This document shows positions 1 through 22,479 of a stretch of 64,000 nucleotides of DNA, in pieces. The DNA lies in IMG/VR virus record IMGVR_UViG_3300022935_000005, positions 1 through 64,000 of that record; one strand, 5' to 3'. A program made the position numbers and the translations under genes. Each line of letters opens with the position of its first letter. Position 1 is the first letter of the stretch. Under the pieces are notes generated by a model. The model saw only the letters and a program-made list of their open reading frames with translations, was not told the DNA's origin and made no database searches.

Positions 1-278
1 TTTCGGAGACGCGCGTTTCCTCCAGTTCTCGCGTAGAGTTCCCCACTATTCACTTTGCCCCTCTGTACACGAGAGACTTGGTCGCCCCGCTGCTGATCGC
101 GTTTTTGTTCCCGCTTTCTCGGCCCAACTCCCCGCCAGAACACAAGAGAACACATGGGCTCTCCGACTATACAAAACTCCACGAGCCGCCTCTGTACACT
201 TTCCACGACAGCGCGCGCAGCGAGGAATCGAGAGGGCTTTTCCCCGGGGCTGAAGTGAAAAAAAGTTCCGCCGATTCA

Positions 279-330
279 TGAACACTCGGACCGCGGCGTC
301 TATAATCTAAATGTTGGTAGGGAATACCAA
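279..330 (+). promoter_or_regulatory. Early promoter (TGAACA-N16-TATAAT) with 5' hairpin
   Basis: TGAACA 279-284, TATAAT 301-306, TTGGTA/TACCAA stem 314-330; same architecture as later early promoters. Confidence 0.7.
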
Positions 331-361
331 ACGCATGCTGAGAAAAAAGGAGAAAGCATAC

Positions 362-589
362 ATGAATTATGAGAAGCAGTATCAGACTAGTCGCTTCACT
401 TTCGGAGTGAACCGTAACACCACGAGCAAGCAGGCCGGCAGCAATGTCGTCACAATCGCGACGAACGCGGGGGATGGATTCTACTCCACGCCGACCACGC
501 AGCTCTCCATGACTGTAAAGGAAGCCCGCGCTCTTCAGGGTTTCCTTAACTCGACTCTCGGAACTAACGACACCGCGGTCAACAGTTAG
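362..589 (+). CDS. Hypothetical early protein (75 aa)
   Basis: AAGGAG SD before ATG 362; lies between a promoter and a terminator. Confidence 0.8.
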   Translation: MNYEKQYQTSRFTFGVNRNTTSKQAGSNVVTIATNAGDGFYSTPTTQLSMTVKEARALQGFLNSTLGTNDTAVNS

Positions 590-626
590 GATCAAGCTCT
601 CACCAGCAGGTGACGGGAAACTCCGG

Positions 627-661
627 GCCGGCGGCTCATTACGGGTCGCCGGCTTTTTTTT
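627..661 (+). terminator. Rho-independent terminator
   Basis: GCCGGCGGC/GTCGCCGGC stem followed by a T8 run. Confidence 0.85.
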
Positions 662-683
662 GTAATCTTCTAGGGAGGTGTGT

Positions 684-767
684 ATGAGAGGTATCGACGT
701 CACAGAAGTCATCGGCATTGCTGCGGTGCTGGCGTTTATCGTCTTCGCGATTGTTGTCACGGCATAA
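684..767 (+). CDS. 27-aa single-TM peptide (MRGIDVTEVIGIAAVLAFIVFAIVVTA)
   Basis: GGAGGT SD, ATG 684, TAA 765-767; translated by hand, below ORF-track cutoff. Confidence 0.65.
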   Translation: MRGIDVTEVIGIAAVLAFIVFAIVVTA

Positions 768-788
768 AACAAAAAAAAGAGAAAAAAG

Positions 789-845
789 CGTGCAAAGCGC
801 CGGCGGTTTGTGGTATAATATTGATGTTGGTCGGGGTAGACCAAC
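789..845 (+). promoter_or_regulatory. Early promoter CGTGCAAA..TGTGGTATAAT plus 5' hairpin
   Basis: CGTGCAAA 789, TATAAT 814, GTTGGTC/GACCAAC stem 826-845. Confidence 0.85.
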
Positions 846-857
846 AAAGGAGACCGC

Positions 858-1088
858 ATGCCCACCGCCGAATACAACACCGCTTTCGCCGCCCAGCTCG
901 GCGACACCCGCCGGGACCTGGCCATTATGGGTTGCGTTGTCGAGGAACAGCGCTTCCAGATCATCCGTGACGGAGCGTTCCTGACCATGACCGAGCTTGA
1001 GTATGTCGACGCCGACGGCATGACCACCCAGCTCCTGTTCGCGGGTACCGGTGACGGCGCTCCCCTTGAACGGTTCAAGCGTTTCTGA
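858..1088 (+). CDS. Hypothetical early protein
   Basis: AAGGAG SD, directly after the promoter. Confidence 0.8.
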   Translation: MPTAEYNTAFAAQLGDTRRDLAIMGCVVEEQRFQIIRDGAFLTMTELEYVDADGMTTQLLFAGTGDGAPLERFKRF

Positions 1089-1096
1089 GATTGACC

Positions 1097-1192
1097 ATGA
1101 AGACAAATACCGATATCATCATTGGCGCGCTGTTGAAGGGCGTCATCATCATGTGTGTTGTTAAGCTCTTGATTGGAGGTGTCCATGTTTGA
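1097..1192 (+). CDS. 31-aa hydrophobic peptide
   Basis: Hand translation MKTNTDIIIGALLKGVIIMCVVKLLIGGVHV; fills the gap and overlaps the next start. Confidence 0.5.
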   Translation: MKTNTDIIIGALLKGVIIMCVVKLLIGGVHV

Positions 1193-1334
1193 TGTTCAGT
1201 TGCGGGCCGTGCACCCCAAGCTGGGTGAGGGAATTGTCCGGCCGCTCAACGGTATGTACTGCGGTCGAGTCCTTGTCGAGTTTGAGGGGTTCGTCCGGTG
1301 GGTAGAGATTGATGACTTGGAATTTCTTGACTGA
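1185..1334 (+). CDS. 49-aa SH3/Tudor-like protein
   Basis: GGAGGT SD; MFDVQLRAVHPKLGEGIV...VLVEFEG (HPxxGxGxV motif); not in ORF track. Confidence 0.75.
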   Translation: MFDVQLRAVHPKLGEGIVRPLNGMYCGRVLVEFEGFVRWVEIDDLEFLD

Positions 1335-1343
1335 GAGGTAGAC

Positions 1344-1544
1344 ATGTTTGCCGGCGATCTCGTTGCACACTGGAACTGGGGTACGGGTCTTGTCCTTAAT
1401 GCTGCACCCACCCGGGAAGAGGTTCCAGAGGAGTGGCAGCACGACTGGCAGAGCGTTGTCCTTGTCCAGTTTCCTGAGTGGCACAACGCATGTGTGTGGG
1501 TCCTTGCCGCCTTCCTTGACCCGATCACCGACGAGTGTGAATAA
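1344..1544 (+). CDS. Small SH3/Tudor-like protein
   Basis: GAGG SD; GDLVAHWNWGTGLV...VLVQF. Confidence 0.75.
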   Translation: MFAGDLVAHWNWGTGLVLNAAPTREEVPEEWQHDWQSVVLVQFPEWHNACVWVLAAFLDPITDECE

Positions 1545-1556
1545 ACTTCAGATAAT

Positions 1557-1615
1557 CGTGCAAAGTACCAGCCCTCTATGGTATAATCTAGATGTTGGTC
1601 GGGGTAACTCGGCAA
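1557..1615 (+). promoter_or_regulatory. Early promoter plus 5' hairpin
   Basis: CGTGCAAA 1557, TGGTATAAT (TATAAT 1582), GTTGGTCGGGGTA leader. Confidence 0.85.
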
Positions 1616-1625
1616 AGGAGAGCGA

Positions 1626-1862
1626 ATGAAGGTCGGCACTGTCACCATCCCGGACTGGGCACCCGAGACTCTGGCCACTGTCCGCGAGGACCTCACCATT
1701 GCCGATGTGGCCTGGGTTGAAAAGCAGTGGTGCGACGTCGACGACGAGAACCGGATGCGGTGGATGACCGAGGTCCTTGTCCCCATGGGACCGTGGGACG
1801 ATCTCAAGTTCTGGTTCGAGGGCCGGGGCGCTGACGCTCGGCTTGTGTGGGCCAACTTCTAG
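1626..1862 (+). CDS. Hypothetical early protein
   Basis: AAGGAG SD; high GC3 codon usage. Confidence 0.8.
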   Translation: MKVGTVTIPDWAPETLATVREDLTIADVAWVEKQWCDVDDENRMRWMTEVLVPMGPWDDLKFWFEGRGADARLVWANF

Positions 1863-1887
1863 AGACACTGACTGAGAGGGAGAGATA

Positions 1888-2076
1888 ATGGGAAAGCACC
1901 TTTACCGCTGGAACTGGAACGAGGGTGGATACAACCAGTGCTACGCCGATACGAAGGCTCAGGCACGGAAGCTGGGTAACGCCATTGTGCCCGGTAAGCT
2001 GACCATCGACGAGAAGACTTTCCGACGGGTGAAGAACCAGGATCGCTTCTGGAAGAACTACCCCATCTTTGATTAA
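1888..2076 (+). CDS. Hypothetical early protein
   Basis: GAGGGAG SD; 62-aa ORF. Confidence 0.75.
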   Translation: MGKHLYRWNWNEGGYNQCYADTKAQARKLGNAIVPGKLTIDEKTFRRVKNQDRFWKNYPIFD

Positions 2077-2085
2077 GGAATCTAT

Positions 2086-2241
2086 TCGGGAGCCAGTAAG
2101 GCCGCGCCCACGGTAACGCTGGAGAGTTAGAGCACAGGGATGGGCGTCCCTGGCGAGCGGACTGGGTCTGCACGGATCGCATCGAAAGCCGCAGGGTGAG
2201 TAGGCACCGTTTCTGTGGGTTCGAATCCCACCTCCCGCACC
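2086..2241 (+). ncRNA. tRNA-like structured RNA (~155 nt) with canonical T-arm and acceptor stem but expanded interior
   Basis: T-arm GTGGG-TTCGAAT-CCCAC 2215-2231; CTCCCG 2232-2237 pairs with CGGGAG 2087-2092; several internal helices. Confidence 0.6.
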
Positions 2242-2280
2242 CTTTGTTTTTGCCAATAAAATCAACAGCTTGGAGAGCAC

Positions 2281-2445
2281 ATGTGGCGTGAAATTGCAGA
2301 CCTGATTCGTGAGCGTTACGAGGAGCAGACCCGAGACCCCGATGAGGACATCATTGTCTGGGGCGATGAGTATTGGGAGGAGCCGCATTACGGCTTTGAT
2401 GCAGAGTACGATCCTCCAGAGTTTGATGTCGACATGCCGTTCTAA
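2281..2445 (+). CDS. 54-aa acidic peptide ending DVDMPF (SSB-tail-like)
   Basis: GGAG SD; hand translation, 19/54 residues D/E; not in ORF track. Confidence 0.75.
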   Translation: MWREIADLIRERYEEQTRDPDEDIIVWGDEYWEEPHYGFDAEYDPPEFDVDMPF

Positions 2446-2480
2446 AATAATCACAAAAAAATAAAATAATTTTGTACATT

Positions 2481-2510
2481 CGTGCAAAGGGCTGACCACT
2501 GTGGTATAAT
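2481..2510 (+). promoter_or_regulatory. Early promoter
   Basis: CGTGCAAA 2481, TGTGGTATAAT (TATAAT 2505), A-rich upstream. Confidence 0.85.
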
Positions 2511-2555
2511 CATAATGTAAGCAAGGTTGGTTAATAAGGAACACGGAGGTTCAGC

Positions 2556-2975
2556 ATGGCAAAGGTAGGATTCGGTAAGGGCGACATCGTTAAGGTTCGG
2601 GACGACGCGTTCGGCGACCGCTGGGACAACACGGTACGGGACTATGTGCCGGAGACTACCGTCCGCGCCAAGTACTACTACACTGCTGCTGACAAGGAGC
2701 GTATGCGGGAAGAACGCCGGAAGGCAATCGCAGAGGCTCAGGCGGCGGGTGAAGACACGTTCGGTATGTGCTTTGATGATGCGGGTGAGCCGCGGTTGAT
2801 GGGTGATGATGGCATTACCTACCTCAAGAAGGGTATCGGATACCGAGTCCTCAGAGCTCGATGCCGTCAGAACTTCAACTACCACACCACTGGCGGCTGG
2901 ACAAAGCTCCTTGACCTTGACACGGGCCGGGAAGTCTTCATCAAGACTGAGAAGCTCGAGCGCGTGGAAGCCTAA
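2556..2975 (+). CDS. Hypothetical protein, possible SH3/KOW-like fold with insertion
   Basis: GGAGG SD; FGKGDIVKV at N-terminus, LLDLDTGREVFIK at C-terminus. Confidence 0.8.
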   Translation: MAKVGFGKGDIVKVRDDAFGDRWDNTVRDYVPETTVRAKYYYTAADKERMREERRKAIAEAQAAGEDTFGMCFDDAGEPRLMGDDGITYLKKGIGYRVLRARCRQNFNYHTTGGWTKLLDLDTGREVFIKTEKLERVEA

Positions 2976-3009
2976 AAAGTTTAATCATTTCAATCACTTG
3001 GGGGGTCTC

Positions 3010-3321
3010 ATGGAAAACGTAATCAAGATCAAGGTCGAACCTTATAACCCACGACGCTCTTATGGGTATCGCGACTACGATATGGAGTGCGGTTGTTGTC
3101 AGCGACCGATCCGGAACCGTGAGACTGCGACTGTGGTCGTGCGGCGCTCTTGTGATGAGCCTGGGTTTGCAGAGTTCCTTCCGATCCCAGAGCATGAGCT
3201 GCCTAACGATCCCGTTGAGTGGGGTACCTTCATCGGTAGTCACTGTGCGAAGGCTCTGCCAAAGACCCACAAGATCACTTACCGAAAGCTTTGGAAGAAC
3301 CACAGCGATACGTGGGTCTAA
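3010..3321 (+). CDS. Putative Zn-binding hypothetical protein
   Basis: CGCC...IGSHC; ATG 3010 after GGGGG. Confidence 0.75.
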   Translation: MENVIKIKVEPYNPRRSYGYRDYDMECGCCQRPIRNRETATVVVRRSCDEPGFAEFLPIPEHELPNDPVEWGTFIGSHCAKALPKTHKITYRKLWKNHSDTWV

Positions 3322-3375
3322 AAACACGCGTTACTCGGATCATAAAAAAATATAACTTGAATAACTCGTGAAAAT

Positions 3376-3442
3376 CGTGCAAATGTGACCCCCTCTGTGG
3401 TATTATATAAATGAAGGTGGGGAAAGGGTTTGAACCCCCGCC
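3376..3442 (+). promoter_or_regulatory. Early promoter plus 5' hairpin
   Basis: CGTGCAAA 3376, TGTGGTATTAT (TATTAT 3401), GGTGGGG/CCCCGCC stem 3416-3442. Confidence 0.85.
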
Positions 3443-3467
3443 ACAGTAAACGTCACAAGGAGACACC

Positions 3468-4268
3468 ATGAACCTCAAGACCTTCCGACTCCTCCAGCAG
3501 GAAAACCCCCACGCCGCGATGATCTTCGATCTCTCCGAGCGGTTCCCACGTGGACCGAAGGGTAAGCTCCGGAAGAAGCACTATCGTCGTGCGGATACGT
3601 GGTCCGACACTTGGGTCTCTGATGAACTGCTGGGTGGTGAGCTCGGCTACGACATCTTTGAGCTCTACAAGGTTGCCAAAGCCGGGATCGGTACGTGGGA
3701 GCTCGCTGATCTTTCAACGACAATCGAAGCAGCTGGTATGGGCTACCACCAGTATATGCCCTCCGCGGACGGAACGGAGAGAGTGTTTGTAAGCCGTAAG
3801 CTCTTCAAGGCCGGGGCTCAGAGTACTCGCCGTCTCAACCGACTGAACGAACGGTTCACTCAGGTGCGGAAGATGGTCGCCGAAAAGAGCAAGAAGAACC
3901 TCTACAACATCCGTATTGGTCATGAATCCAATGAGGTTGTGGTCTTCGGTGACAGCGAGCAGCACGCTCGGATGCAGTATGAAATGATGCTGAAGGCTGG
4001 TTTTGATGCCGGCACTCGTGCGGGATTCATCAACGCGGGCTGGGGTGAGCGTGATGAAGCGCCGATCCGAGTCGTGTACCGCGGACCGAGTCACGGTGTC
4101 CATGAGATCATGGCAGCCAACCAGGAGTACTCGAAGGGAATCGATGATGCCGTCAGCAAGATGGAGCTCCAGATCAAGCAGCTACAGGGCAAGATCGCTG
4201 CCGCTCGGGACATCCAGCAGATGGTCGATATGTTCACCCTTCAGTCCTGTGCCGCGGCGGCTGAATAA
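3468..4268 (+). CDS. Hypothetical protein with C-terminal coiled coil
   Basis: AAGGAG SD; 266 aa. Confidence 0.85.
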   Translation: MNLKTFRLLQQENPHAAMIFDLSERFPRGPKGKLRKKHYRRADTWSDTWVSDELLGGELGYDIFELYKVAKAGIGTWELADLSTTIEAAGMGYHQYMPSADGTERVFVSRKLFKAGAQSTRRLNRLNERFTQVRKMVAEKSKKNLYNIRIGHESNEVVVFGDSEQHARMQYEMMLKAGFDAGTRAGFINAGWGERDEAPIRVVYRGPSHGVHEIMAANQEYSKGIDDAVSKMELQIKQLQGKIAAARDIQQMVDMFTLQSCAAAAE

Positions 4269-4295
4269 GCCAACGATATCAACCACTTAGAAGTT

Positions 4296-4323
4296 TGTAC
4301 ATTTCACAAAGTTGAGGTATAAT
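4296..4323 (+). promoter_or_regulatory. Promoter TGTACA-N16-TATAAT
   Basis: Same spacing as sites at 279, 14520, 17045 and 36717. Confidence 0.6.
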
Positions 4324-4615
4324 GAAAATGAATGGTTTGGTAGAAGCGCTTAAGACCGGATGTCTTGTCTTGACTGATGATGAGTTGAACATCGCTTTCA
4401 AGATTCTGTCAGATGAGATGCTGGTTCGGCGGGAGAGACGAGAGGCAGCGACAAAGAGCAAGCTGTATCAAGGACAGGCTGTGAAGTTCTTTCATAGCGA
4501 GCAGGGAGACATCCACGGAACAATTCATAGGGTAAAGTACAAGAAGGCATTGGTCAAGGATCTCAATAGTGGTGTGGTTTGGGATGTTCCATTCCACATG
4601 CTAACGATCGTTTAG
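4322..4615 (+). CDS. Hypothetical protein, C-terminal SH3-like barrel
   Basis: LYQGQAVKF...GTIHRV...ALVKD...WDVP; true start probably 4328 because 4322 overlaps the -10. Confidence 0.75.
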   Translation: MKMNGLVEALKTGCLVLTDDELNIAFKILSDEMLVRRERREAATKSKLYQGQAVKFFHSEQGDIHGTIHRVKYKKALVKDLNSGVVWDVPFHMLTIV

Positions 4616-4651
4616 TTTGAGTTGATCACCAAGATTACGAAGGAGACGGTG

Positions 4652-4846
4652 ATGGATAAGAACAAGAAGTACAGTCATAACAACCCCAACCCCCACCTCG
4701 ACCCAGATATGCGAGACTACGTTATGGACCTCTGGTTCCGTGGTGTCGATCCAGAAGCTATTTCTCGAATGGTCCGACGCAAGATCGCTCGAGAGCGTGG
4801 GTATGAAAACAGTAAGCGCGAAAAGAATGACAAAAATGTTGCATAA
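4652..4846 (+). CDS. Small basic hypothetical protein (possible HTH)
   Basis: AAGGAG SD at ~4640; VMDLWFRGVDPEAISRMV. Confidence 0.65.
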   Translation: MDKNKKYSHNNPNPHLDPDMRDYVMDLWFRGVDPEAISRMVRRKIARERGYENSKREKNDKNVA

Positions 4847-4857
4847 GTTTTGACAAT

Positions 4858-4923
4858 CGTGCAAACAGCATAGGAACTGTGGTATTATTTATATGTTGGT
4901 GGGGATAAGGAATGGCCGCCAAC
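4858..4923 (+). promoter_or_regulatory. Early promoter plus 5' hairpin
   Basis: CGTGCAAA 4858, TGTGGTATTAT (TATTAT 4883), GTTGGTGG/CCGCCAAC stem 4895-4923. Confidence 0.85.
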
Positions 4924-4948
4924 GTTAACCCAACCAAGGAGAGTTCAC

Positions 4949-6034
4949 ATGGACATCAAGACCATCAAGACCATCGTTCCCAACCTTCCCGCCAACATTG
5001 CTGTTCTCATGCGAGGACCGACAGGTGTGGGTAAGTCTCACGTAGCCCGGGCTTTCGCTGATGAGCTCGGTCTGCCCTTCATCGATGTCCGTGGTTCCAC
5101 CATGGATGAGGCGAAGGTCGGTGGTCTGCCGGATATGCGGGCTGTCGATGAGAAGAAGGTTGCCACCTTCGTGGTCCCTAGCTGGTTCAAGACCGCTTGT
5201 GACCGCCCCTGTGTCATCATGCTGGACGAGCTTAACCGCTCCATGCCGACCGTGATGCAGGCCTTCTTCCAGATTGTCCTGGACCGTGAGCTCGGTAACG
5301 ATGAGGACGGTGTCCCCTACCGACTCCACCCGGAAACCCGGGTCATCGCGGCCATCAACGCCGGTAACGAGTACGACGTCAACGAGATGGACCCCGCTCT
5401 GCTCCGCCGCTTCTGGGTCTGCGATGTTGAGCCCACAGTGGCTGACTGGACCGATTGGGCTGCCGGTGCTGGTGTGGACAAGGTCATGGTCGAGTTCATC
5501 AAGCAGGAGCCTGCGCACTGGCGTGTTGACCCGGCCTCGGTTGAGCCCGGTACGGTTGTCCCGACTCCGGCCAGCTGGCACCGTCTCAGCGACTCGCTGG
5601 TTCACATGGGTCTGGCACCGGAGAAGCTGGCTGGTAACGATGTTCCGGCTCACTTCTACCCCGTCCTGACTGGGTTCGTCGGAGTTGAGGCAGCTATTGC
5701 CTTCCGCGACTTCGTCAAGAACTACGAGCTCCAGATCACCGCTGAAGACATCCTCGAGGGTAAGATCAAGGCTGCAGACATCAAGGATGCTCCTGCTAGC
5801 CAGCTCGCCTCGGTGGTTGAGAAGATCACGGCTCACGCCGCGGACAACAACTGGAAGCCGGCTCAGGTGAAGCGGATTGCCAAGTTCGCGGAAGAGGTTG
5901 GTGGTGAGTTCCTCATCCAGGTCTTCACCGGAGTTCAGAAGGCAGGGAACATGAAGAACCTGCTGCCCCTGAACCAGGCCATCGGCATGAAGGTGGTCGA
6001 GCTGGTTAACGCCGCTCGCGCTACTCAGAAGTAA
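4949..6034 (+). CDS. MoxR-like AAA+ ATPase (AAA_5 type)
   Basis: Walker A GPTGVGKS, Walker B IMLDELNR, sensor AAIN, MDPALLRRF. Confidence 0.9.
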   Translation: MDIKTIKTIVPNLPANIAVLMRGPTGVGKSHVARAFADELGLPFIDVRGSTMDEAKVGGLPDMRAVDEKKVATFVVPSWFKTACDRPCVIMLDELNRSMPTVMQAFFQIVLDRELGNDEDGVPYRLHPETRVIAAINAGNEYDVNEMDPALLRRFWVCDVEPTVADWTDWAAGAGVDKVMVEFIKQEPAHWRVDPASVEPGTVVPTPASWHRLSDSLVHMGLAPEKLAGNDVPAHFYPVLTGFVGVEAAIAFRDFVKNYELQITAEDILEGKIKAADIKDAPASQLASVVEKITAHAADNNWKPAQVKRIAKFAEEVGGEFLIQVFTGVQKAGNMKNLLPLNQAIGMKVVELVNAARATQK

Positions 6035-6051
6035 ACGGGAGTTTGCTCCCT

Positions 6052-6094
6052 AAGGGGGACCGGGGTTTTTGGGTTAACTCGGTCCCCCTTCTTT
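6052..6094 (+). terminator. Rho-independent terminator
   Basis: AAGGGGGACCGGG/CTCGGTCCCCCTT stem followed by CTTT. Confidence 0.75.
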
Positions 6095-6124
6095 ATACAA
6101 TCCTCTATAGACAGGAGGTAACCC

Positions 6125-6331
6125 GTGGCCGAAAAGAAAGTAACTCTTAACGAGATGATCGCTCAGATTCGAGAGTGGCATACTGAAGCTCTTAACATGC
6201 GTAACGATGGATGGACACAGCAGGCTTTTAAGGATCGACTAGAGTTCCTACATGCCCGTATGACAGCTGTGGTAGAGTCAATCAACCCTCCTCAGACGGC
6301 GCCGACAGAGAATAATAACGACAAAGAGTAG
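6125..6331 (+). CDS. Hypothetical protein
   Basis: AGGAGG SD, GTG start. Confidence 0.75.
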   Translation: MAEKKVTLNEMIAQIREWHTEALNMRNDGWTQQAFKDRLEFLHARMTAVVESINPPQTAPTENNNDKE

Positions 6332-6336
6332 ACATT

Positions 6337-6401
6337 CGTGCAATAGTGCTTTAACCTGTGGTATTATATAAATGATGGTGGGGAAGGAATAGAGCTTCTC
6401 C
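6337..6401 (+). promoter_or_regulatory. Early promoter plus 5' hairpin
   Basis: CGTGCAAT 6337, TGTGGTATTAT (TATTAT 6362), GGGGAAG/CTTCTCC stem 6380-6401. Confidence 0.85.
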
Positions 6402-6420
6402 CAAAACTACAGGAGTCCAC

Positions 6421-7821
6421 ATGGCAGACAAGACGACCGCAACAGACGCTCCCTTTGAGCACGCCTCTGAAGAGGTAGCCAAGGCATTTGACCTTCAGCC
6501 TCACCTCGTTGGTATGATGCTGGAGGAGCCGTTCTACACTAAGGTCCTTCGAATCCTGACCAAGACCCGGACTCGGAAGATCCCGACCGCCGGAGTTATT
6601 GCGAAGGACGGGGACCTGCAGATGTACTGGAACGACCGGTTCATGGCGGCTCTGCCCGGTAAGCAGATTCGGGGAGTCCTCAAGCATGAGATGCTCCACC
6701 TCATCCTCGAACACACCACCACTCGTAAGTACGAGCCTCACAAGGTTTGGAACTACGCCACTGACTTGGCGATCAACAGCCACCTCATGGACGAGCTTCC
6801 TGAGTTTGGTCTCTTCCCGGGTAAGGCGTTTAAGCCGCTGACTGAGGAACAACAGGAGCGAATGGGTGAGGCAGCTGTCAAGCAGTACGAGGCAGTGTCC
6901 AAGAAGATTGAAAGCTTCCCAGCTGGGCAGGCTGCTGAGTGGTACTTCGCGCGGCTCATGGAAGATGATGAAGTCAAGGAAGCCATTGAGAACCCGAAGC
7001 AGAACGGTAAGAGTCTGGCTGATGCTCTCCGCGATGGTGATGTGACCATCAACGAGAACGGTCAGATTTGTGATGCTGACGGTAACCCTCTCCCCACTGT
7101 CCCTGGTACGCTGGATGACCATGACGGCTGGGGCGAAATGAGCGATGAAGACCGTGAGTACATCAAGGCCAAGGTCAAGCAGGCTGCTGGTGACGCTGCC
7201 AAGGAGTGCGACCAGAAGGGTAGCTGGGGTTCGGTACCTGCAGAACTGCGGAAGCAGATCAAGGCAGCACTGGTCAACGAAGTTCCCTGGCAGAAGATCC
7301 TTGACCGCTTCTGTGGTTACAGCCGACGGGCCAACCGGACCACGAGCTACAGCCGCCTTCACAGCACCATGGGTCGTTTGGTTCCCGGTGCCAAGCGTGG
7401 GTACACGAGCTCGGTGGCAGCTTACATTGACCAGTCCGGCTCAGTCAGCGATCGTGAGCTGGCCCTCTGCTTCGGCGAGCTGGCTAACCTGGCCAAGAAC
7501 ACTGAGTTCACCTGCTACCACTTCGACACCGAGGTGGATGAGAAGAGCAAGACGGTATGGAAGCGTAAGGGTCACCCTGCCAACCGGACTCGCTGCGGTG
7601 GTACGGACTTCGCTGCTCCGACCGAGCACGCTGGAAAGCACAAGCGGGAGTTCGACGGGTACATCATCCTGACCGACGGCTACGCTCCTGACCCGGGTCC
7701 GAGCCGGTTGCCCCGAGCTTGGGTGGTTACCCCTGACGGAGCAGTTCAGGACTGGATGTTCAACTACAAGAAGGACGTCATCGTAAAGATGACTTGGCCA
7801 AAGAGTCTGCAGGAGGCGTAA
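6421..7821 (+). CDS. DUF2201-family protein: HExxH metallopeptidase-like domain plus vWA-like domain
   Basis: HEMLH, WNYATDLAIN, MIDAS DQSGS, GGTDF, ILTDG. Confidence 0.9.
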   Translation: MADKTTATDAPFEHASEEVAKAFDLQPHLVGMMLEEPFYTKVLRILTKTRTRKIPTAGVIAKDGDLQMYWNDRFMAALPGKQIRGVLKHEMLHLILEHTTTRKYEPHKVWNYATDLAINSHLMDELPEFGLFPGKAFKPLTEEQQERMGEAAVKQYEAVSKKIESFPAGQAAEWYFARLMEDDEVKEAIENPKQNGKSLADALRDGDVTINENGQICDADGNPLPTVPGTLDDHDGWGEMSDEDREYIKAKVKQAAGDAAKECDQKGSWGSVPAELRKQIKAALVNEVPWQKILDRFCGYSRRANRTTSYSRLHSTMGRLVPGAKRGYTSSVAAYIDQSGSVSDRELALCFGELANLAKNTEFTCYHFDTEVDEKSKTVWKRKGHPANRTRCGGTDFAAPTEHAGKHKREFDGYIILTDGYAPDPGPSRLPRAWVVTPDGAVQDWMFNYKKDVIVKMTWPKSLQEA

Positions 7822-8129
7822 TGAAGTTTAAGAAGGCAAATGAACGAGTGGAATGTGCTGATGGATTCTCCATGAGTGTACAGGCAAGTGAACGCAGCTA
7901 CTGTACTCCACGTGACGACCAGGGACCCTATACTGCGGTAGAGGTAGGTTTCCCCTCCTCATATGATTACTACCTCCACGAATACGCTGAGACCCCGGAG
8001 GATCCAACGGGGACAGTATACGGTTGGGTACCAGCTGATACAGTTATGATGTGTATTGAAGCACATGGCGGCATGATCAGTGGAGAGCTTCCGCCGCTAG
8101 TAAAAACAGATTTTGAGAGCATCACATGA
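7821..8129 (+). CDS. Conserved phage hypothetical protein
   Basis: GGAGG SD; CADGFSMSVQAS...VEVGFPS...VYGWVP. Confidence 0.8.
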   Translation: MKFKKANERVECADGFSMSVQASERSYCTPRDDQGPYTAVEVGFPSSYDYYLHEYAETPEDPTGTVYGWVPADTVMMCIEAHGGMISGELPPLVKTDFESIT

Positions 8130-8470
8130 AAGTAGACGAAGAAAAAGTAGACATTGCCAGAATGTTCTGGATAGAGGACTGGGACAAGATGTCTGCCTTT
8201 GATACAGATATAGAGAACGTAGAGTGGCACGTCACAAACTGCATGACGTATCTCATCCAGCTCAGCGAAGAAGTGGTACCTCTATACAAGCCTCCGCCGA
8301 ACATAGAGCTAGAGGGAGACTGGAACGAGAGAGAGATGCTGACTCTATATAGAGACCTGCTTGAAGCGGCAGAGCGTCGGGGGTACGAACCAGATGCCGG
8401 GATGATCACCCGGATTCGGAAAGCTCTACCCCCGAAGCGTGTCCGGGTCCGGAGAGTTGTTCGGCCTTGA
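8126..8470 (+). CDS. Hypothetical protein
   Basis: ATGA overlap with upstream gene. Confidence 0.7.
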   Translation: MKVDEEKVDIARMFWIEDWDKMSAFDTDIENVEWHVTNCMTYLIQLSEEVVPLYKPPPNIELEGDWNEREMLTLYRDLLEAAERRGYEPDAGMITRIRKALPPKRVRVRRVVRP

Positions 8471-8475
8471 GTTCC

Positions 8476-8750
8476 TGTATAGAGGGGGGCTGGTAAACAG
8501 GCCTGGTAAAATGTACAGAGGGGCCCCACTCCGAGCGAGAAAAAGTGGCCCAGATGGCCCCATCGGGGGCCCCTGAAAACAGGCCCCTTTTGGCCCCTTC
8601 TGGTGGCCCCCTGGAGCCTACTCAGTGGGCCTTTCTGGAGGGCATATGCCTAAGCGCGGTAAAAAATTTTTTCGGAGCGATTTTGAAAACCAAAAGCCCA
8701 AAATCCCAAAAAAAATTCTCGGGAAATTTTGAAAACGAAAAGGGTACCCC
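8476..8750. repeat. Non-coding GGCCC repeat cluster followed by A/T tracts
   Basis: GGCCC at 8522, 8547, 8556, 8568, 8582, 8592, 8605; then AAAAAATTTTTT and repeated A-tracts. Confidence 0.7.
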
Positions 8751-8796
8751 AAGAGAGAGACTCAACGCGGTACTAAAGAAAACGAAAGAAGAGCAC

Positions 8797-9036
8797 ATGA
8801 ACAATCTCCACATCATTGCCAACTATCTATTCGATAACCCAGGAGCGCGGTACACGGATGTCACAAAGCACTTGTGCCAGGAGCGCGGAAAGGTATGGAG
8901 CAAAGGGCACTATACTCGGTACTTCACCAACCCGATCTACAGCTCAGGTCGCCGGTACGCTCACCACCTCTGGTGCAAGACCCCATGCGGTGGATGGATG
9001 TTGACATTGGAAGGATATGGATATGTCCGCAAGTAA
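8797..9036 (+). CDS. Hypothetical protein (possible winged helix)
   Basis: MNNLHIIANYLFDNPGARYTDV; ORF-track extension to 8545 spans the repeat DNA and is probably spurious. Confidence 0.7.
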   Translation: MNNLHIIANYLFDNPGARYTDVTKHLCQERGKVWSKGHYTRYFTNPIYSSGRRYAHHLWCKTPCGGWMLTLEGYGYVRK

Positions 9037-9298
9037 GCTCATAGAGGTCGGAGATCTGGTCCGGTGGGGCTGGCCCCGCTTCCACAGCGATTCTCGCGTG
9101 GGAATCGTGACGCGAGTAGATATCAAACCTCGAGGCGCCGGATTCAGAGTGCCCAACCCGCGAGTCCGCTATGTTGTGCAGTGGTTCTACCCAGATGGAC
9201 AACCCAGCATCACTCAAGAGCACGTCTTCAACAATGAGATAACACGAGTCACAGAGGATCGAAATCCATGGCAAGACAAAACAGAGACTTCAAAGTAG
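9017..9298 (+). CDS. Small SH3/KOW-like protein
   Basis: IEVGDLVRW...GIVTRV...YVVQWF. Confidence 0.8.
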   Translation: MDMSASKLIEVGDLVRWGWPRFHSDSRVGIVTRVDIKPRGAGFRVPNPRVRYVVQWFYPDGQPSITQEHVFNNEITRVTEDRNPWQDKTETSK

Positions 9299-9534
9299 GA
9301 GACATTGTCCAGTGGGCTCCACCGATCGGCGGCGCCAACTCCGGTCACGTCTTTAGAGATGCAGTGGGTCTTATTGTAGGTGTCAAGTACCCAGACCCCG
9401 ACTCACAGCGTAACGAATGGGCAGACCCTCACATGTGGTACACAGTCCAGTGGTTCAGAGACGGCATTGCATCGGGTCGACCAGATCACATCGTTGAACA
9501 CCACATTCAGAGAGTTCGAGATGACGCACCATAG
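9268..9534 (+). CDS. Small SH3/KOW-like protein
   Basis: FKVGDIVQW...GLIVGV...YTVQWF. Confidence 0.8.
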   Translation: MARQNRDFKVGDIVQWAPPIGGANSGHVFRDAVGLIVGVKYPDPDSQRNEWADPHMWYTVQWFRDGIASGRPDHIVEHHIQRVRDDAP

Positions 9535-9817
9535 CAAGCTCAGCATCGGCGCGGGAGACACAGTGGTCCGGGTTCATGAGCAGGAAGACACCGATCCCTA
9601 CCCAGGACTCGTTATCAGGCGGGTAGAACCTCGTGAACTCTTGAGTATGGTGTTTGGAGAGGGAGATGACTTCGAAATGGGGGAAGCTCTATGGATGCGA
9701 GATGCAGCATCTGGTCTAGAGGAGTATTCGGGTGAATGGGTCCGCTATGAAGTCCTTTGGCCGGATGGTCGGTTCTCGATCGAATCGATCGCCCAAATCA
9801 GGAAGGCATATTCGTGA
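9521..9817 (+). CDS. Small SH3/KOW-like protein
   Basis: IGAGDTVVRV...GLVIRR...YEVLWPDG. Confidence 0.75.
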   Translation: MTHHSKLSIGAGDTVVRVHEQEDTDPYPGLVIRRVEPRELLSMVFGEGDDFEMGEALWMRDAASGLEEYSGEWVRYEVLWPDGRFSIESIAQIRKAYS

Positions 9818-10017
9818 TCGGTGTGGGAGACATTGTCTGCGTTGACGGAGATCTACTGGGTACAGCAATGGGACTCGGTCTTGTTACCCGGGTTTGTGAG
9901 TCTCGCTTTTCTAATTCATGTACTCGGTTTGTAGACGTCCTCTGGGCCTCGGGTGATATGTTCAAGGATGTTGATATGAACGTGCTGTTGCTTGTGCATT
10001 CTGCCGGCAGCCCGTGA
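9814..10017 (+). CDS. Small SH3/KOW-like protein
   Basis: GTGA overlap; IGVGDIVCV...GLVTRV...VDVLWASG. Confidence 0.75.
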   Translation: MIGVGDIVCVDGDLLGTAMGLGLVTRVCESRFSNSCTRFVDVLWASGDMFKDVDMNVLLLVHSAGSP

Positions 10018-10039
10018 CCTGCTAGTATACTTAAATGTT

Positions 10040-10276
10040 ATGGACACCGACTCACGCTATTCTGATGTTATCATTGGCTCACTTGTTGACCATCCGGTCT
10101 ACGGCCCGGGGCTGATCACTGCTGTCACGACCGAACCCGCATTTGCGACGCGCCAAAGCACGCATCGTCCCGATTACATCATTGTCTGTAGCGTCCTATG
10201 GAACACGGGTGAGTTGCAAACTGGCTGGCCCGCCAACCGGCTCGTCGATTACCTTGTGTTAACGTCGATTATCTAG
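10040..10276 (+). CDS. Small SH3/Tudor-like protein
   Basis: IGSLVDHPVYGPGLITAV...SVLWNTG; TATACTTA 6 nt upstream of ATG. Confidence 0.75.
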   Translation: MDTDSRYSDVIIGSLVDHPVYGPGLITAVTTEPAFATRQSTHRPDYIIVCSVLWNTGELQTGWPANRLVDYLVLTSII

Positions 10277-10293
10277 AGCGTATACTTAACGAT

Positions 10294-10575
10294 ATGGCAA
10301 AGGAAACTGTATTCTCCCCGCGCGGTGCTCTGCACCGGAACCTTGTTGGGTGCATCATCGTTCATCCGCACTTGGGTCACGGGCTCGTCACGAGCACGGA
10401 TCGCTACTGGACTGAAGTCCGGCAACAGCGACGTCAAGTCTGGACTGTTCTCTGGTCTGAGACCGGTACCGCTGAAGATGTTGACGAACGCATCATGCAA
10501 CACTGCATGATCATTGACGACGGAGACGGCGCTAAAGAGTGGGGTTCATGGGCCGAGGTTGTAGGTCACAAGTGA
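10294..10575 (+). CDS. Small SH3/Tudor-like protein
   Basis: VGCIIVHPHLGHGLVTS...WTVLWSETG; TATACTTA 5 nt upstream of ATG. Confidence 0.75.
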   Translation: MAKETVFSPRGALHRNLVGCIIVHPHLGHGLVTSTDRYWTEVRQQRRQVWTVLWSETGTAEDVDERIMQHCMIIDDGDGAKEWGSWAEVVGHK

Positions 10576-10611
10576 CCCTCTGAGACCCGCGGTCTCGAGA
10601 CATGATTGAGT

Positions 10612-10890
10612 CTAAGGTCGGCGAGTCCCGGGACGACTGGAGATGACTCTGAAGCGTGCCTTGGCACGGAGCTTCTCACCTGTTCGCGGGTGAGTCAAGT
10701 CAATTTCTCCCTTGAGTTCCGAGTCTCTATCTGGATCTGACATCATGATTCTGGATATCTGCGCCTGTATTTCACTCATTTGCTTTTTGAGCGCCTTGTC
10801 AATTGTGATGACGCTCCGCACTACGAAGGCAAGTCCCCCGGTGATCATGATGGCAATAGCATAGACCGTTAATTCAAAACCCATATCCAT
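10612..10890 (-). CDS. Membrane-anchored coiled-coil hypothetical protein (92 aa)
   Basis: AAAGGA SD before MDMGFELTVYAIAIM; N-terminal TM helix. Confidence 0.7.
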   Translation of the reverse strand: MDMGFELTVYAIAIMITGGLAFVVRSVITIDKALKKQMSEIQAQISRIMMSDPDRDSELKGEIDLTHPRTGEKLRAKARFRVISSRPGTRRP

Positions 10891-11360
10891 AGGGTATCCT
10901 TTCACAACCGATCTACCTTTAAGTATGGTGACTGGATGTATTGTGATTTCTCTTGGAGTGCGATCCGAGCAAGAAGGCACGCCTTCGGCGCGAGGATGCA
11001 CCCATGAAACGCAAAAAGTGGGTGTGCCGAAAACGCGTCCCGCGTTATTCACTGTTTCCAAAAAAACGCGTGTGTCCGGCGCCGACGCGCCGATAAATGA
11101 GAAAACCCACTTCACTCTCCGGCGGTGCCATTGTATGAGGGTGGGAAAGGTAACAACGTGGGTTTGACTATTATAATAGAGCTGTAATCGTTGAGGAGGA
11201 GGCGGATGGGTCGTGTTGGAGCGAATCAAGAAGATCAACAAGACGTTCGCTGTAATATCTATAATAGTTGCTGTCTGGTTGCACATGTACGTAAAATCAA
11301 TCAAGCAACAGAGCGATGATGCTGTATATTTAGAAAAACAACCAGGATGGAGAAATCAAA

Positions 11361-17091: not shown

Positions 17092-18717
17092 ATGAATCAA
17101 GAAATTATTTCTAAATTTCCGTATAAGTCAATTAGAGATCAGCAGCTTCAAGCTATAGAATTTTCAATCGACGCTATAAAGTCACAAGGCAAGAAGTTTG
17201 TGGTTATCGAGGCTGGTACCGGTGTCGGGAAATCAGCTATTGGATTAACAGTGGCAAGACTTCTTAGCGATGGAAGTTCAGAAAAGCATGCGCCCGGTGC
17301 ATACTTTTTAACCACTCAAAAAATTCTACAAGAACAGTATGTCAAAGACTTTGGTGGATTTAGCGGACCCATGAAGTCGATTAAATCTTCGTCTAACTAC
17401 TGTTGCAACTTCAATAAGGGAACTTCTTGTGGAGAAAGCTTAAGAGCTCTAAAGACAGCAGACAAATCGAGCAGGTTCTTTAAGTCATGCGCGTTTAATT
17501 GTGTATATAAGAAAGCCAAAGAATCTTTTGTCAATGGAACAGAGGGAGTTACTAACTTCCCTTACTTTCTAGCAGAGACACAATACTCTGGCAAAATTAC
17601 GCCAAGAGATGTTCTGGTAATTGATGAGGCCCACAATATCGATTCAGAGTTGAGCAAATTTATTGAGATCACCATCTCTGATAAGTTTTGCATGTCATTC
17701 TTGAATATGTCTATCCCGAATGGGATGACGCAACTACAGTACATTAAATGGATCAGTGATGTATATTTGAAGACAACAGTTTCAAAACTTACTCATCTTG
17801 AGAAGATGATGGAAAAATACATTGGGTTGAAGGAGAAAATTCGATCAGGCGAATTTGCATCAATTGCAAAAAAGTTTGAGATGCTTGATAAGCATGTGTG
17901 TAAGCTAAGAAGGTTCTTAGATTTGTATGACGGAAATAATTGGGTTATGAATGACATACCAAAAGACAATATGTCAAGTAGAAAACTACAATTTAAACCA
18001 ATTGATGTAGCACCGTATGCAAATGAAATGCTATATGATCATGGTCGTTACGTCGTATTAATGTCTGCGACAATTCTTGATAGAGATGCGTTTGCTTTGT
18101 CGGTCGGTATCCCTTCTCAGGATATGGCTTTTATATCTCTCGAGTCGCCGTTTCCTGTTGAGAATATGCCGATCATCTACGCCGGTATCGGAAAGATGAC
18201 GTACTCTGCTATTGACGGTACTTTGCCTAAGATGGTACAAGCTATTAAGCAGATCATTGATGAACACAAGAATGAAAAAGGCATCATACATTGTCATTCG
18301 TATAAGGTCGCTAGCTATATTAAGAAGAATATCAGAAGCACGAGAATCTTGATCCATGGATCTGATAACCGGGACGAAGTCTTGGAAAAGCACAAGAAGT
18401 CTAAAAAACCGACTGTTCTAATTTCTCCTTCAATGACAGAGGGTGTTGATCTAAAGGGAGAGTTAAGTAGATTTCAAGTTATCTGTAAAGTACCGTACCC
18501 TTACCTCGGTGACAAACTAATTAAAAAGAAGATGAATAAGTGGCAGTGGTGGTATCCGCTTCAGACTGCTAAGACCATCGTACAGTCTGTTGGAAGGTCA
18601 GTCAGGTCTAACGAGGATAGAGCAGTGACGTATATTCTGGATTCAGATTTCGAGAGGTTCTACAAATCTAATTCATCTCTTTTTCCAGCTAAGTTTAGGG
18701 AGTGTTTAAAATTATGA
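17092..18717 (+). CDS. DinG/Rad3-like SF2 helicase
   Basis: EAGTGVGKS, DEAH, MSATI, EGVDL, QSVGRSVR, Cys cluster. Confidence 0.9.
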   Translation: MNQEIISKFPYKSIRDQQLQAIEFSIDAIKSQGKKFVVIEAGTGVGKSAIGLTVARLLSDGSSEKHAPGAYFLTTQKILQEQYVKDFGGFSGPMKSIKSSSNYCCNFNKGTSCGESLRALKTADKSSRFFKSCAFNCVYKKAKESFVNGTEGVTNFPYFLAETQYSGKITPRDVLVIDEAHNIDSELSKFIEITISDKFCMSFLNMSIPNGMTQLQYIKWISDVYLKTTVSKLTHLEKMMEKYIGLKEKIRSGEFASIAKKFEMLDKHVCKLRRFLDLYDGNNWVMNDIPKDNMSSRKLQFKPIDVAPYANEMLYDHGRYVVLMSATILDRDAFALSVGIPSQDMAFISLESPFPVENMPIIYAGIGKMTYSAIDGTLPKMVQAIKQIIDEHKNEKGIIHCHSYKVASYIKKNIRSTRILIHGSDNRDEVLEKHKKSKKPTVLISPSMTEGVDLKGELSRFQVICKVPYPYLGDKLIKKKMNKWQWWYPLQTAKTIVQSVGRSVRSNEDRAVTYILDSDFERFYKSNSSLFPAKFRECLKL

Positions 18718-19542: not shown

Positions 19543-19545
19543 ATA

Positions 19546-22467: not shown

Positions 22468-22479
22468 CCCGGGGAAAAC

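What the first reader, a model, noticed from the sequence alone, without database searches (positions are those of the whole stretch)
2086..2241. tRNA-shaped RNA with perfect T-arm and acceptor but a pseudoknotted domain where the D-arm should be
Seen: the 3' end reads like a tRNA (T-arm 2215-2231, CTCCCGC-A-CC), but its acceptor partner (T)CGGGAG lies ~150 nt upstream at 2086-2092. The interior can form CCAGT/ACTGG (2093-97/2161-65), CCGC/GCGG (2102-05/2157-60) and hairpin CAGGGA/TCCCTG (2135-52), whose loop TGGGC complements GCCCA (2106-10, potential pseudoknot). It also has an anticodon-position arm CTG..CGG/CCG-CAG (2168-94) and a variable-arm-like GGTG/CACC (2195-2208). It is too long for a tRNA, too short for tmRNA and lacks the tmRNA G3:U70 end. 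Inference: an undescribed tRNA-mimic ncRNA in an early operon, possibly a decoy for anticodon nucleases or tRNA-binding proteins, or an RNase P/Z processing signal.
Basis: partly seen in the sequence, partly recalled or inferred. Interest (0 to 1): 0.8.

Follow-up and report, generated by a model that had tools for sequence, protein, structure and literature searches.

The report
Phage tRNA-like RNA with non-tRNA body
An uncultured 281-kb salt-marsh phage carries a conserved ~155-nt RNA that has the acceptor stem and T-arm of a leucine tRNA but a body of four other hairpins. It matches no described RNA family, and its job is not known.

Summary
The element is real. Window 2086-2241 has a canonical T-arm (2215-2231), a 6-bp acceptor stem (2087-2092 with 2232-2237; U2086 faces C2238), A2239 at the discriminator position and an encoded CC. 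That 3' half is identical to tRNA-Leu genes.

Default ARAGORN finds no tRNA or tmRNA, and Rfam finds no family. Eight sequence variants (89-96% identical) come from related phage contigs. In one lineage the module sits in a different gene order.

The RNA is 91% identical where neighbouring genes are 57-81% identical at third codon positions. Three base pairs change on both sides and stay paired: one each in the T-stem, hairpin P2 and hairpin P3. Under random substitution this has a probability of about 6e-5.

The supported fold is acceptor, P2, P3, P4, a long arm P5 and the T-arm. The hexaloops of P2 and P3 are perfectly complementary.

ARAGORN can read the region as tRNA-Ser(CGA) with a 66-nt intron, but only below its threshold, and the variation does not fit that model.

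Best reading: a tRNA-derived stable small RNA matured by tRNA-processing enzymes, resembling T4 species 1 RNA in layout. Its function is inferred, not shown.

The parts
2083..2249 (+). Conserved RNA module: the block that stays homologous when the flanking genes differ
   Evidence: In L104/L106/L112 the module lies between the 78-aa and 64-aa genes instead of after the 62-aa gene. Similarity starts near 2083 and ends in the T-run.
2087..2092 (+). Acceptor stem, 5' strand (CGGGAG). U2086 precedes it and is mismatched with C2238.
   Evidence: Six pairs with 2232-2237, invariant in 8 variants. Real tRNA-Leu genes have GCGGGAG here.
2093..2122 (+). Hairpin P2: outer helix 2093-97/2118-22, 3x3 internal loop, inner helix 2101-04/2111-14, hexaloop CGCCCA 2105-2110
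   Evidence: Predicted from the single sequence and by RNAalifold. Pair 2097:2118 is U.G, U-A or A-U.
2123..2134 (+). Conserved linker AGAGUUAGAGCA. AGAG 2123-26 could pair with UUCU 2211-14 (helix H, speculative).
   Evidence: G2126A in L104 would turn G.U into A-U. The helix costs +1.6 kcal/mol in the energy model.
2135..2152 (+). Hairpin P3 with hexaloop UGGGCG 2141-2146, complementary to the P2 loop (proposed kissing loops)
   Evidence: C2135-G2152 becomes A-U in L104. The six loop-loop pairs are invariant.
2157..2171 (+). Hairpin P4 (GCGGAC-UGG-GUCUGC)
   Evidence: A variant contig in an RNA library has G2159A, turning G.U into A-U.
2172..2210 (+). Arm P5: ACGG/CCGU, GC/GC, internal loop AUCGAAA (2181-87) opposite RAGUAG (2198-2203), 3-bp tip 2188-90/2195-97 with variable loop 2191-94
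   Evidence: RNAalifold and a fold constrained to keep acceptor and T-arm. Almost all of the dense variation at 2188-2198 is loop or wobble change in this model. The GAA/AGUA internal loop resembles a bulged-G (loop E) motif; this comes from my own knowledge and was not tested.
2215..2231 (+). T-arm with canonical T-loop UUCGAAU
   Evidence: G2217-C2229 becomes U-A in L104/L112. U2216-A2230 becomes U.G in L121/L122.
2232..2241 (+). Acceptor 3' strand CUCCCG, C2238, A2239 at the discriminator position, encoded CC
   Evidence: From the T-arm through A2239 and CC (2215-2241) the sequence is identical to the tRNA-Leu genes, which continue with A to give CCA where the window has C.
2243..2251 (+). 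U-rich tract kept with the module (TTTGTTTTT; TTTCTTTTT in L104)
   Evidence: In L104 it is followed directly by a promoter-like TGGTATAAT cassette.
1556..1590 (+). Early-type promoter cassette (CGTGCAAAG-N14-TGGTATAAT) heading the unit that contains the RNA
   Evidence: The same motif recurs at about 786-820 and 2480-2513. Consensus match only.

Best explanation
Window 2086-2241 encodes a tRNA-derived structured small RNA. It is not a decoding tRNA. It keeps the acceptor/T-arm coaxial minihelix of a tRNA-Leu. The D-arm, anticodon arm and variable arm are replaced by four hairpins (P2-P5) held in a compact core, probably through a 6-bp kissing interaction between the P2 and P3 loops.

Inferred steps. 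It is transcribed with small early genes from a host-type promoter. The minihelix is the part that RNase P, the 3'-trimming nucleases and the CCA-adding enzyme recognise. The RNA is therefore most likely cut out of the operon transcript at about 2085/2086 and after A2239-CC, completed to CCA, and left as a stable ~157-nt tRNA mimic, as is known for the 139-nt T4 species 1 RNA. Its strongly constrained body most likely binds a host or phage protein that normally handles tRNA.

Shown: conservation, fold and tRNA-Leu origin. Inferred: processing. A guess: the binding partner and the effect.
For: No tRNA, tmRNA or Rfam family is detected. From the T-arm through A2239 and CC (2215-2241) the sequence is identical to the tRNA-Leu genes of many organisms and of another phage; those genes continue with A to give CCA, where the window has C.

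Eight variants were found, and the module is kept as a unit in two different gene orders. Window versus L104: the RNA is 91% identical, while third codon positions of neighbouring genes are 71%, 81%, 59% and 57% identical.

All 360 pair cells of the proposed fold are standard pairs. Three pairs changed on both sides, and 1 of 500 shuffles reaches this. RNAalifold finds the same helices on its own. With 14 random substitutions on 32 pairs fixed beforehand, three or more kept double changes occur with probability about 6.5e-5.

The P2 and P3 hexaloops are perfectly complementary and invariant. T4 rnaC has the same layout: closing stem, long 5' hairpin, second hairpin, perfect T-arm.
Against: There is no direct evidence that the RNA is excised, stable or CCA-tailed. 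The RNA-library data are assembled contigs, which span the region unbroken and cannot separate RNA from contaminating DNA.

All three double changes lie on one lineage (L104/L106/L112). The variants are close (89-96%), so covariation is thin, and the acceptor stem, P2 inner helix, P4, P5 and the kissing loops never vary within the eight aligned variants. The only change seen in any of them is G2159A in P4, in a variant contig from the RNA library.

U2086 opposite C2238 weakens the stem end, and the encoded tail is CCC/CCU, not CCA. Folding energy is not better than that of shuffles. No binding partner is identified, and all neighbouring proteins lack known families.
Confidence: 0.55

Rival explanations
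1. It is a true tRNA gene interrupted by a short intron, like the 'enigmatic introns' of Lak megaphage tRNAs. Removing 2115-2180 would give a class II tRNA with anticodon CGA (Ser) and a Leu-type acceptor.
For: ARAGORN with intron search and a threshold lowered to 95% or 90% calls tRNA-Ser(cga) at 2085-2242 with a 66-nt insert. With those 66 nt deleted, default ARAGORN calls a 93-nt tRNA-Ser(CGA). Short introns in phage tRNA genes are reported in PMC6784885. Another phage contig, L002, has two tRNA genes with 53- and 95-nt inserts.
Against: The call is below threshold, and shuffled windows give 2-5 such calls per 64 kb at the 90% setting. The D-arm would have only 2 pairs, and its 'G18' (2100) is G, A or C among variants. 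Anticodon-stem pair 2111:2191 is broken in 4 of 8 variants, and the variable-arm pairs are broken in 3-7 of 8, so only 87% of cells pair. The covarying pair 2097:2118 joins 'exon' to 'intron'. No bulge-helix-bulge motif lies at the junctions: one strict hit elsewhere against 1.5 expected. At 66 nt the insert is far too short for a group I or group II intron. No joined form appears in the RNA-library contigs (weak evidence). No allele lacks the insert.
Confidence: 0.12
2. It acts only in cis on the operon transcript. It would be a tRNA-like punctuation signal where RNase P or 3' nucleases separate the upstream and downstream messages, or a 3'-end structure with its U-tract that ends or stabilises the upstream message. 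The excised RNA would have no role of its own.
For: It lies between cistrons in the window lineage. In L104 it lies at the end of a unit, followed by a T-run and then a promoter. The U-tract travels with the module.
Against: A processing signal needs only the minihelix. Here about 120 nt of interior, including loops and linkers, are held almost invariant, and two interior helices covary. The U-tract starts 4-5 nt after the stem, which is poor geometry for an intrinsic terminator, and the scan reports no terminator there.
Confidence: 0.2
3. It is a decaying tRNA pseudogene, a fusion of tRNA fragments, or an attachment-site remnant, with no function.
For: The 3' half is a perfect tRNA-Leu end. 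The interior has fragments that look like a D-arm (GCUGGAGAGUUAGAGCA) and a T-arm-like hairpin (P3), which suggests descent from tRNA genes. L005 and L006 carry the same 3' end without a tRNA call.
Against: The RNA diverges far less than synonymous sites of its neighbours. Compensatory changes occur in three helices. The whole module, not just the 3' half, is kept when the gene order changes. No integrase was seen among the ORFs tested in the window: all ten in the first ~8 kb and roughly 30 of the larger ones further on. The other small ORFs were not scanned.
Confidence: 0.03
4. It is a miniature tmRNA or another aminoacylated ribosome-rescue RNA.
For: It has a tRNA-like acceptor/T-arm with a non-tRNA interior. 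A distant relative, L102, encodes a normal 386-nt tmRNA in the same kind of region.
Against: ARAGORN's tmRNA search finds nothing, even at an 80% threshold. Pair 3:70 is G-C, not G.U. There is no tag reading frame and no tmRNA-type 5' sequence, and 155 nt is far below tmRNA size.
Confidence: 0.02

Closest known systems
Bacteriophage T4 species 1 RNA (rnaC, 139 nt) and species 2 RNA (rnaD, 119 nt)
   Same: Phage-encoded, about 120-140 nt, and annotated as a small stable RNA. rnaC ends in a perfect T-arm (CCGGGTTCGAATCCCGG) followed by an acceptor-like strand that pairs with the 5' end. One long and one shorter hairpin take the place of the D and anticodon arms. From my own knowledge: it is matured by tRNA-processing enzymes, and its function is still unknown.
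   Different: No detectable sequence homology beyond the T-loop (model R1: 9.0 bits, E about 0.1). rnaC lies in a tRNA gene cluster, whereas this RNA sits alone among small early ORFs, with no tRNA in 64 kb. P2/P3 loop complementarity and the P5 internal-loop motif were not looked for in rnaC.
Phage tRNA genes with short 'enigmatic' introns (Lak megaphages, PMC6784885)
   Same: A tRNA-like gene in a very large phage, interrupted by tens of nucleotides that are nearly identical between strains. Tools call it only when introns are allowed.
   Different: Lak cases have otherwise complete tRNAs and alleles without the insert. Here the D-arm and anticodon stem are not maintained, the 'intron' covaries with the 'exon', and no insert-free allele exists.
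tmRNA tRNA-like domain
   Same: An acceptor/T-arm minihelix joined to a large non-tRNA interior containing tertiary pairings.
   Different: No G3.U70, no tag ORF, no tmRNA call, and less than half the size.
Bacterial Y RNA YrlA (tRNA-like module bound with Ro/Rsr)
   Same: A tRNA mimic that is not used in decoding. Some jumbo phages carry the Ro/TROVE partner (PMC7824862).
   Different: From my own knowledge, YrlA has its ends in the Ro-binding stem and a closed acceptor end, the opposite topology. There is no Rfam hit. No TROVE protein was found among the window proteins tested; the only trace is a sub-threshold vWA_Ro60 hit inside a DUF2201 protein.

Membership tests
canonical tRNA | Detected by tRNA finders and covariance models at their normal thresholds | tested here: not met
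   ARAGORN default: 0 genes in 64 kb. Rfam gathering: 0. Best tRNA-clan match 16.9 bits against a cut-off of 47.
canonical tRNA | T-arm of 5 bp with a T-loop UUCRANY, directly followed by the acceptor 3' strand | tested here: met
   2215-2231; one compensatory and one wobble change.
canonical tRNA | 7-bp acceptor stem | tested here: inconclusive
   Six pairs plus a U2086/C2238 mismatch, invariant in all variants.
canonical tRNA | D-arm with conserved G18 G19 and U8 | tested here: not met
   No 8-9 linker. 2093-2097 pairs with 2118-2122 (covariation). 2100 is G, A or C among variants.
canonical tRNA | Anticodon arm: 5-bp stem and 7-nt loop with U33 | tested here: not met
   It exists only after deleting 66 nt, and even then pair 2111:2191 is broken in 4 of 8 variants.
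intron-containing tRNA | Removing the insert yields a sequence that passes as a tRNA | tested here: met
   ARAGORN default calls tRNA-Ser(CGA), 93 nt, on the sequence without 2115-2180.
intron-containing tRNA | A recognisable splicing signal: bulge-helix-bulge at the junctions, or a group I/II intron core | tested here: not met
   No bulge-helix-bulge at 2114/2115 or 2180/2181; one strict hit elsewhere against 1.47 expected in shuffles. 66 nt is too short for a self-splicing intron, and Rfam gives no intron hit.
intron-containing tRNA | Exon helices maintained in relatives | tested here: not met
   87% of cells paired. D, anticodon and variable stems all lose pairs, against 100% for the unspliced fold.
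intron-containing tRNA | Spliced RNA observed | tested here: inconclusive
   No joints in four RNA-library runs, but only assembled contigs were available.
tmRNA | G3.U70 alanine identity pair, tag reading frame, tmRNA-type fold | tested here: not met
   Pair 3:70 is G2088-C2236. ARAGORN -m finds nothing at default or at 80%. No Rfam tmRNA hit.
any Rfam 15 family | Score at or above the family's gathering threshold | tested here: not met
   0 matches in the window. In the scan of 1950-2350 at E up to 10, the best matches have E of about 0.8-1.
T4 species 1 RNA (rnaC) kind | Homology to rnaC | tested here: not met
   Model R1 scores rnaC 9.0 bits, E about 0.1, through the T-arm only. The resemblance is in layout.
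T4 species 1 RNA (rnaC) kind | Stable RNA matured by RNase P and 3' trimming with CCA addition | not testable with these tools
   Needs end-mapped RNA data or enzyme assays.
Y RNA / YrlA | Ro/Rsr (TROVE) partner gene and a Ro-binding stem formed by the RNA ends | tested here: not met
   No TROVE domain in the ~40 window proteins scanned, ~30 of them against Pfam. The ends form an open acceptor stem. The rest of the 281-kb genome was not examined.

The most novel reading that the evidence does not exclude
This is the founding member of an undescribed class of phage tRNA mimics. A tRNA-Leu minihelix would be grafted onto a kissing-loop core that acts in trans on the host's tRNA-handling machinery. 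For example, it could act as a decoy or inhibitor for a tRNA-directed defence enzyme that reads the acceptor/T-arm, or as a hijacker of a tRNA-processing, modifying or charging enzyme early in infection.
Probability: 0.25. Interest if true: 0.8.

Novelty: new variant of a known kind. Interest (0 to 1): 0.58.

Why it matters
Phages have been known for fifty years to make tRNA-like stable RNAs (T4 species 1 and 2) whose purpose is still unknown. Large phages also carry odd 'intron-bearing' tRNA genes that nobody has explained. This element is a compact case supported by covariation. It retains the half of a tRNA that processing enzymes, the CCA-adding enzyme, EF-Tu and many tRNA-directed toxins recognise, and it lacks the half that decodes. 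If it proves to be a trans-acting mimic, it would open a testable route into how phages manipulate or shield the host tRNA system. It would also give a model for searching other phage genomes. If it is only a processing signal, it is a minor curiosity.

Tried and rejected
- DNA similarity of 1800-2600 to 50,697 GenBank phages: no match.
- Exact-pattern scans of IMG/VR: the interior motif occurs only in the window's own contig. The T-arm/acceptor 23-mer hits ordinary tRNA-Leu genes and two possible att-like sites.
- Relatives of the 139-aa neighbour in IMG/VR and JGI metagenomes (about 80 loci). Model R1 on 675 kb of them found only the close variants and ordinary tRNAs. No distant homologue turned up.
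- The 78-aa neighbour's more distant relatives (83% and 71% identity) gave no new variant: the longer contigs lack the RNA and the 71% one ends before its expected position.
- Ro/TROVE partner (Y RNA idea): not found.
- RNA ligase or splicing endonuclease in the window: none among about 30 larger proteins scanned against Pfam.
- Bulge-helix-bulge search: at chance level.
- DGR-like template repeat for the hypervariable 139-aa gene or for the RNA's variable patch: none in the window.
- Antisense targets of two conserved single-stranded segments within the window: at chance level.
- Structure of the 139-aa protein: confident model (pLDDT 86.9) but no significant PDB match, only weak SH3-like hits.
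- Triplet 2192-94 reads CAG, UAG or UAA (all Leu anticodons) among variants. It has no U33 and no closing stem, and any transition keeps YAR, so I treat it as a probable coincidence.
- Two other sub-threshold ARAGORN calls in the window (3415-3495 on the minus strand; 8165-8422) have non-canonical T-loops and look spurious.

Full report
**Where it is.** The window is the first 64 kb of a 280,913-bp viral contig from a salt-marsh metagenome (IMGVR_UViG_3300022935_000005 = Ga0255780_10000006). Nearly all genes are on the + strand. Hits include tail-fibre, baseplate, helicase and PhoH families, so this is a jumbo phage. Its best match to a cultured phage is only 35% protein identity.

The finding lies in the GC-richer first 11 kb. 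That stretch consists of small ORFs headed by a repeated promoter-like cassette, CGTGCAAAG-N14-TGGTATAAT. The RNA fills the 204-nt gap between a 62-aa ORF (1888-2076) and a 54-aa ORF (2281-2445). None of the neighbouring proteins matches Pfam or PHROGs.

**The observation.** CGGGAG at 2087-2092 pairs with 2232-2237. T2086 faces C2238, so the stem has six pairs plus a terminal mismatch.

Default ARAGORN finds no tRNA or tmRNA in the whole window. Rfam finds nothing at gathering score. In an E-value scan the best tRNA-clan match is tRNA-Sec at 16.9 bits (E=1.1), and it is essentially the T-arm. The minimum-energy fold is no more stable than shuffled sequence (z = -0.49).

**Origin of the 3' half.** From the T-arm through A2239 and CC (2215-2241) the sequence is identical to tRNA-Leu genes; those genes continue with A to give CCA, where the window has C. 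These include tRNA-Leu(CAG) of another phage contig. They also include tRNA-Leu genes of Nitrosopumilus, Bathyarchaeia, Acidimicrobiia and others, all of which begin GCGGGAG. The element therefore carries a tRNA-Leu-type minihelix with position 1 changed from G to U.

**Relatives.** I followed the neighbouring 139-aa, 62-aa and 78-aa proteins through the protein and contig collections. This gave eight distinct versions of the RNA, 89-96% identical to the window. A ninth partial version came from an RNA-library contig.

In the window lineage the gene order is 78-aa, 62-aa, RNA, 54-aa. In L104/L106/L112 it is 78-aa, RNA, T-run, promoter, 64-aa, promoter, 281-aa. Similarity begins near 2083 and ends in the T-run near 2249. 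The RNA plus its U-tract therefore behaves as a discrete module.

More distant relatives of the phage carry ordinary tRNA genes, and in one case a tmRNA, in the equivalent region. They do not carry this RNA.

**Constraint.** Between the window and L104 the RNA is 91% identical. Third codon positions of the four nearest shared genes are 71%, 81%, 59% and 57% identical. Among the closest strains the RNA is no better conserved than its flanks, so the signal comes from the more distant lineage.

**Fold.** Variation singles out one structure:
- In the T-stem, G2217-C2229 becomes U-A, and U2216-A2230 becomes U.G.
- Pair 2097:2118 is U.G, U-A or A-U. This fixes hairpin P2 (2093-2122).
- C2135-G2152 becomes A-U in hairpin P3.
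- G2159A turns a G.U into A-U in hairpin P4.

All 360 pair cells of this fold are standard pairs. Three pairs changed on both sides, and only 1 of 500 shuffles reaches that; slid controls give none. RNAalifold recovers the acceptor, P2, P3, P4 and the T-arm independently. It adds a long arm P5 (2172-2210) just before the T-arm. A fold that merely enforces acceptor and T-arm gives the same picture at -61.3 kcal/mol, against -64.5 unconstrained.

I fixed 32 pairs from the single-sequence fold plus the canonical T-arm. Fourteen random substitutions then give three or more kept double changes with probability about 6.5e-5. One caveat applies: all three double changes are on one branch.

**Tertiary features.** The hexaloops of P2 (CGCCCA, 2105-2110) and P3 (UGGGCG, 2141-2146) are perfectly complementary and never vary. 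By my estimate the chance is about 4e-4 per loop pair.

In the P5 model the dense variation at 2188-2198 falls in a 4-nt tip loop or is wobble-type change in its 3-bp stem. The flanking GAA and AGUA strands are invariant. From my own knowledge this resembles a bulged-G/loop E motif; I did not test it.

A four-pair helix AGAG/UUCU (2123-26 with 2211-14) would make a neat four-way junction. It is only weakly supported.

The long-range pairs CCAGT/ACTGG and CCGC/GCGG are contradicted. The 'anticodon-position arm' and the GGTG/CACC arm lose pairs in most variants.

**The intron alternative.** With intron search and a lowered threshold, ARAGORN calls tRNA-Ser(cga) at 2085-2242 with a 66-nt insert at 2115-2180. 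Without those 66 nt it calls the tRNA at default settings. Short unexplained introns in phage tRNAs have been reported for Lak megaphages (PMC6784885). An unrelated phage contig here also has two tRNA genes with such inserts.

Several results argue against this reading:
- Shuffled windows give 2-5 sub-threshold calls per 64 kb.
- The D-arm would have two pairs, and its 'G18' varies.
- The anticodon-stem and variable-arm pairs are broken in many variants, so only 87% of cells pair.
- The covarying P2 pair joins 'exon' to 'intron'.
- No bulge-helix-bulge motif is present at the junctions.
- No joined form appears in the RNA-library contigs.

I give this reading about 0.12.

**Other alternatives.**
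- A tmRNA is excluded: pair 3:70 is G-C, there is no tag frame, and ARAGORN -m finds nothing.
- A Y RNA is unlikely: the ends are open rather than closed, and no TROVE protein was found.
- A dead pseudogene or att remnant is contradicted by constraint and covariation. The interior nevertheless looks tRNA-derived: it has a D-arm-like GGAGAGUUAGAGCA segment and a T-arm-like P3.
- A purely cis-acting processing or 3'-end signal remains possible. It fits the position and the travelling U-tract. It does not explain why about 120 interior nucleotides are held almost fixed.

**Closest known.** T4 rnaC (species 1 RNA, 139 nt) is annotated as a small stable RNA. It ends in a perfect T-arm, and its ends pair. 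It has a long and a short hairpin in place of the D and anticodon arms. No sequence homology is detectable.

**Verdict.** This is a real, conserved, tRNA-derived structured RNA that fits no described family. The most likely mechanism is excision and maturation by tRNA-processing enzymes into a stable tRNA mimic that binds a tRNA-handling protein. The structure and the constraint are shown. The processing and the partner are inferred.

Noticed in passing
window 1-11000 vs 11000-64000: GC content is 52-55% in the first ~11 kb (small early-type ORFs) and 38-46% in the rest of the window.
   Followed up: no
window ~279-330, ~786-850, ~1556-1620, ~2480-2550, ~4296-4323: A promoter-like cassette (CGTGCAAAG-N14-TGGTATAAT) recurs, often followed by a 5'-leader hairpin GTTGGT..ACCAAC. 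Gene order around the RNA differs between lineages at these cassettes, which suggests cassette-mediated shuffling of small early genes.
   Followed up: partly
window 2556-2975 (+): The centre of this 139-aa protein is 69-79% identical in DNA between strains that are 95-100% identical around it. Its family (alignment A3) often lies next to tRNA genes or a tmRNA in distant relatives. The AlphaFold model is confident (pLDDT 86.9) but has no significant PDB match. No DGR-like template repeat occurs in the window.
   Followed up: partly
window 19997-24408 (+): DUF444/YeaH, SpoVR and PrkA genes lie in a row. This is a bacterial stress-kinase trio carried by a phage.
   Followed up: no
window 28161-29480, 18702-19953, 4949-7821 (+): PhoH with an N-terminal PIN domain; a cytidylyltransferase-like gene and, ~330 bp downstream, a Nudix gene; a MoxR-type AAA ATPase and, ~390 bp downstream, a DUF2201 vWA/metallopeptidase protein.
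   Followed up: no
L102 5907-6292: A distant relative of this phage encodes a full tmRNA (tag ANDNVELNYALAA) inside an array of ten tRNA genes, just upstream of its 139-aa family gene.
   Followed up: no
L002 606-775 and 1117-1242 (same in L004): In an unrelated tRNA-rich phage contig, two genes have perfect acceptor, D and T arms but 95- and 53-nt inserts after position 32. ARAGORN calls them only with intron search.
   Followed up: partly
L005 6059-6085; L006 9455-9481 (-): The same tRNA-Leu T-arm/acceptor 3' end occurs in AT-rich viral contigs without a tRNA call. These may be attachment-site remnants.
   Followed up: no
window 2192-2194: Among the nine variants this triplet is CAG, UAG or UAA. 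All are leucine anticodons, on an RNA with a tRNA-Leu acceptor. It has no U33 and no closing stem, so it is probably a coincidence, but it remains unexplained.
   Followed up: partly
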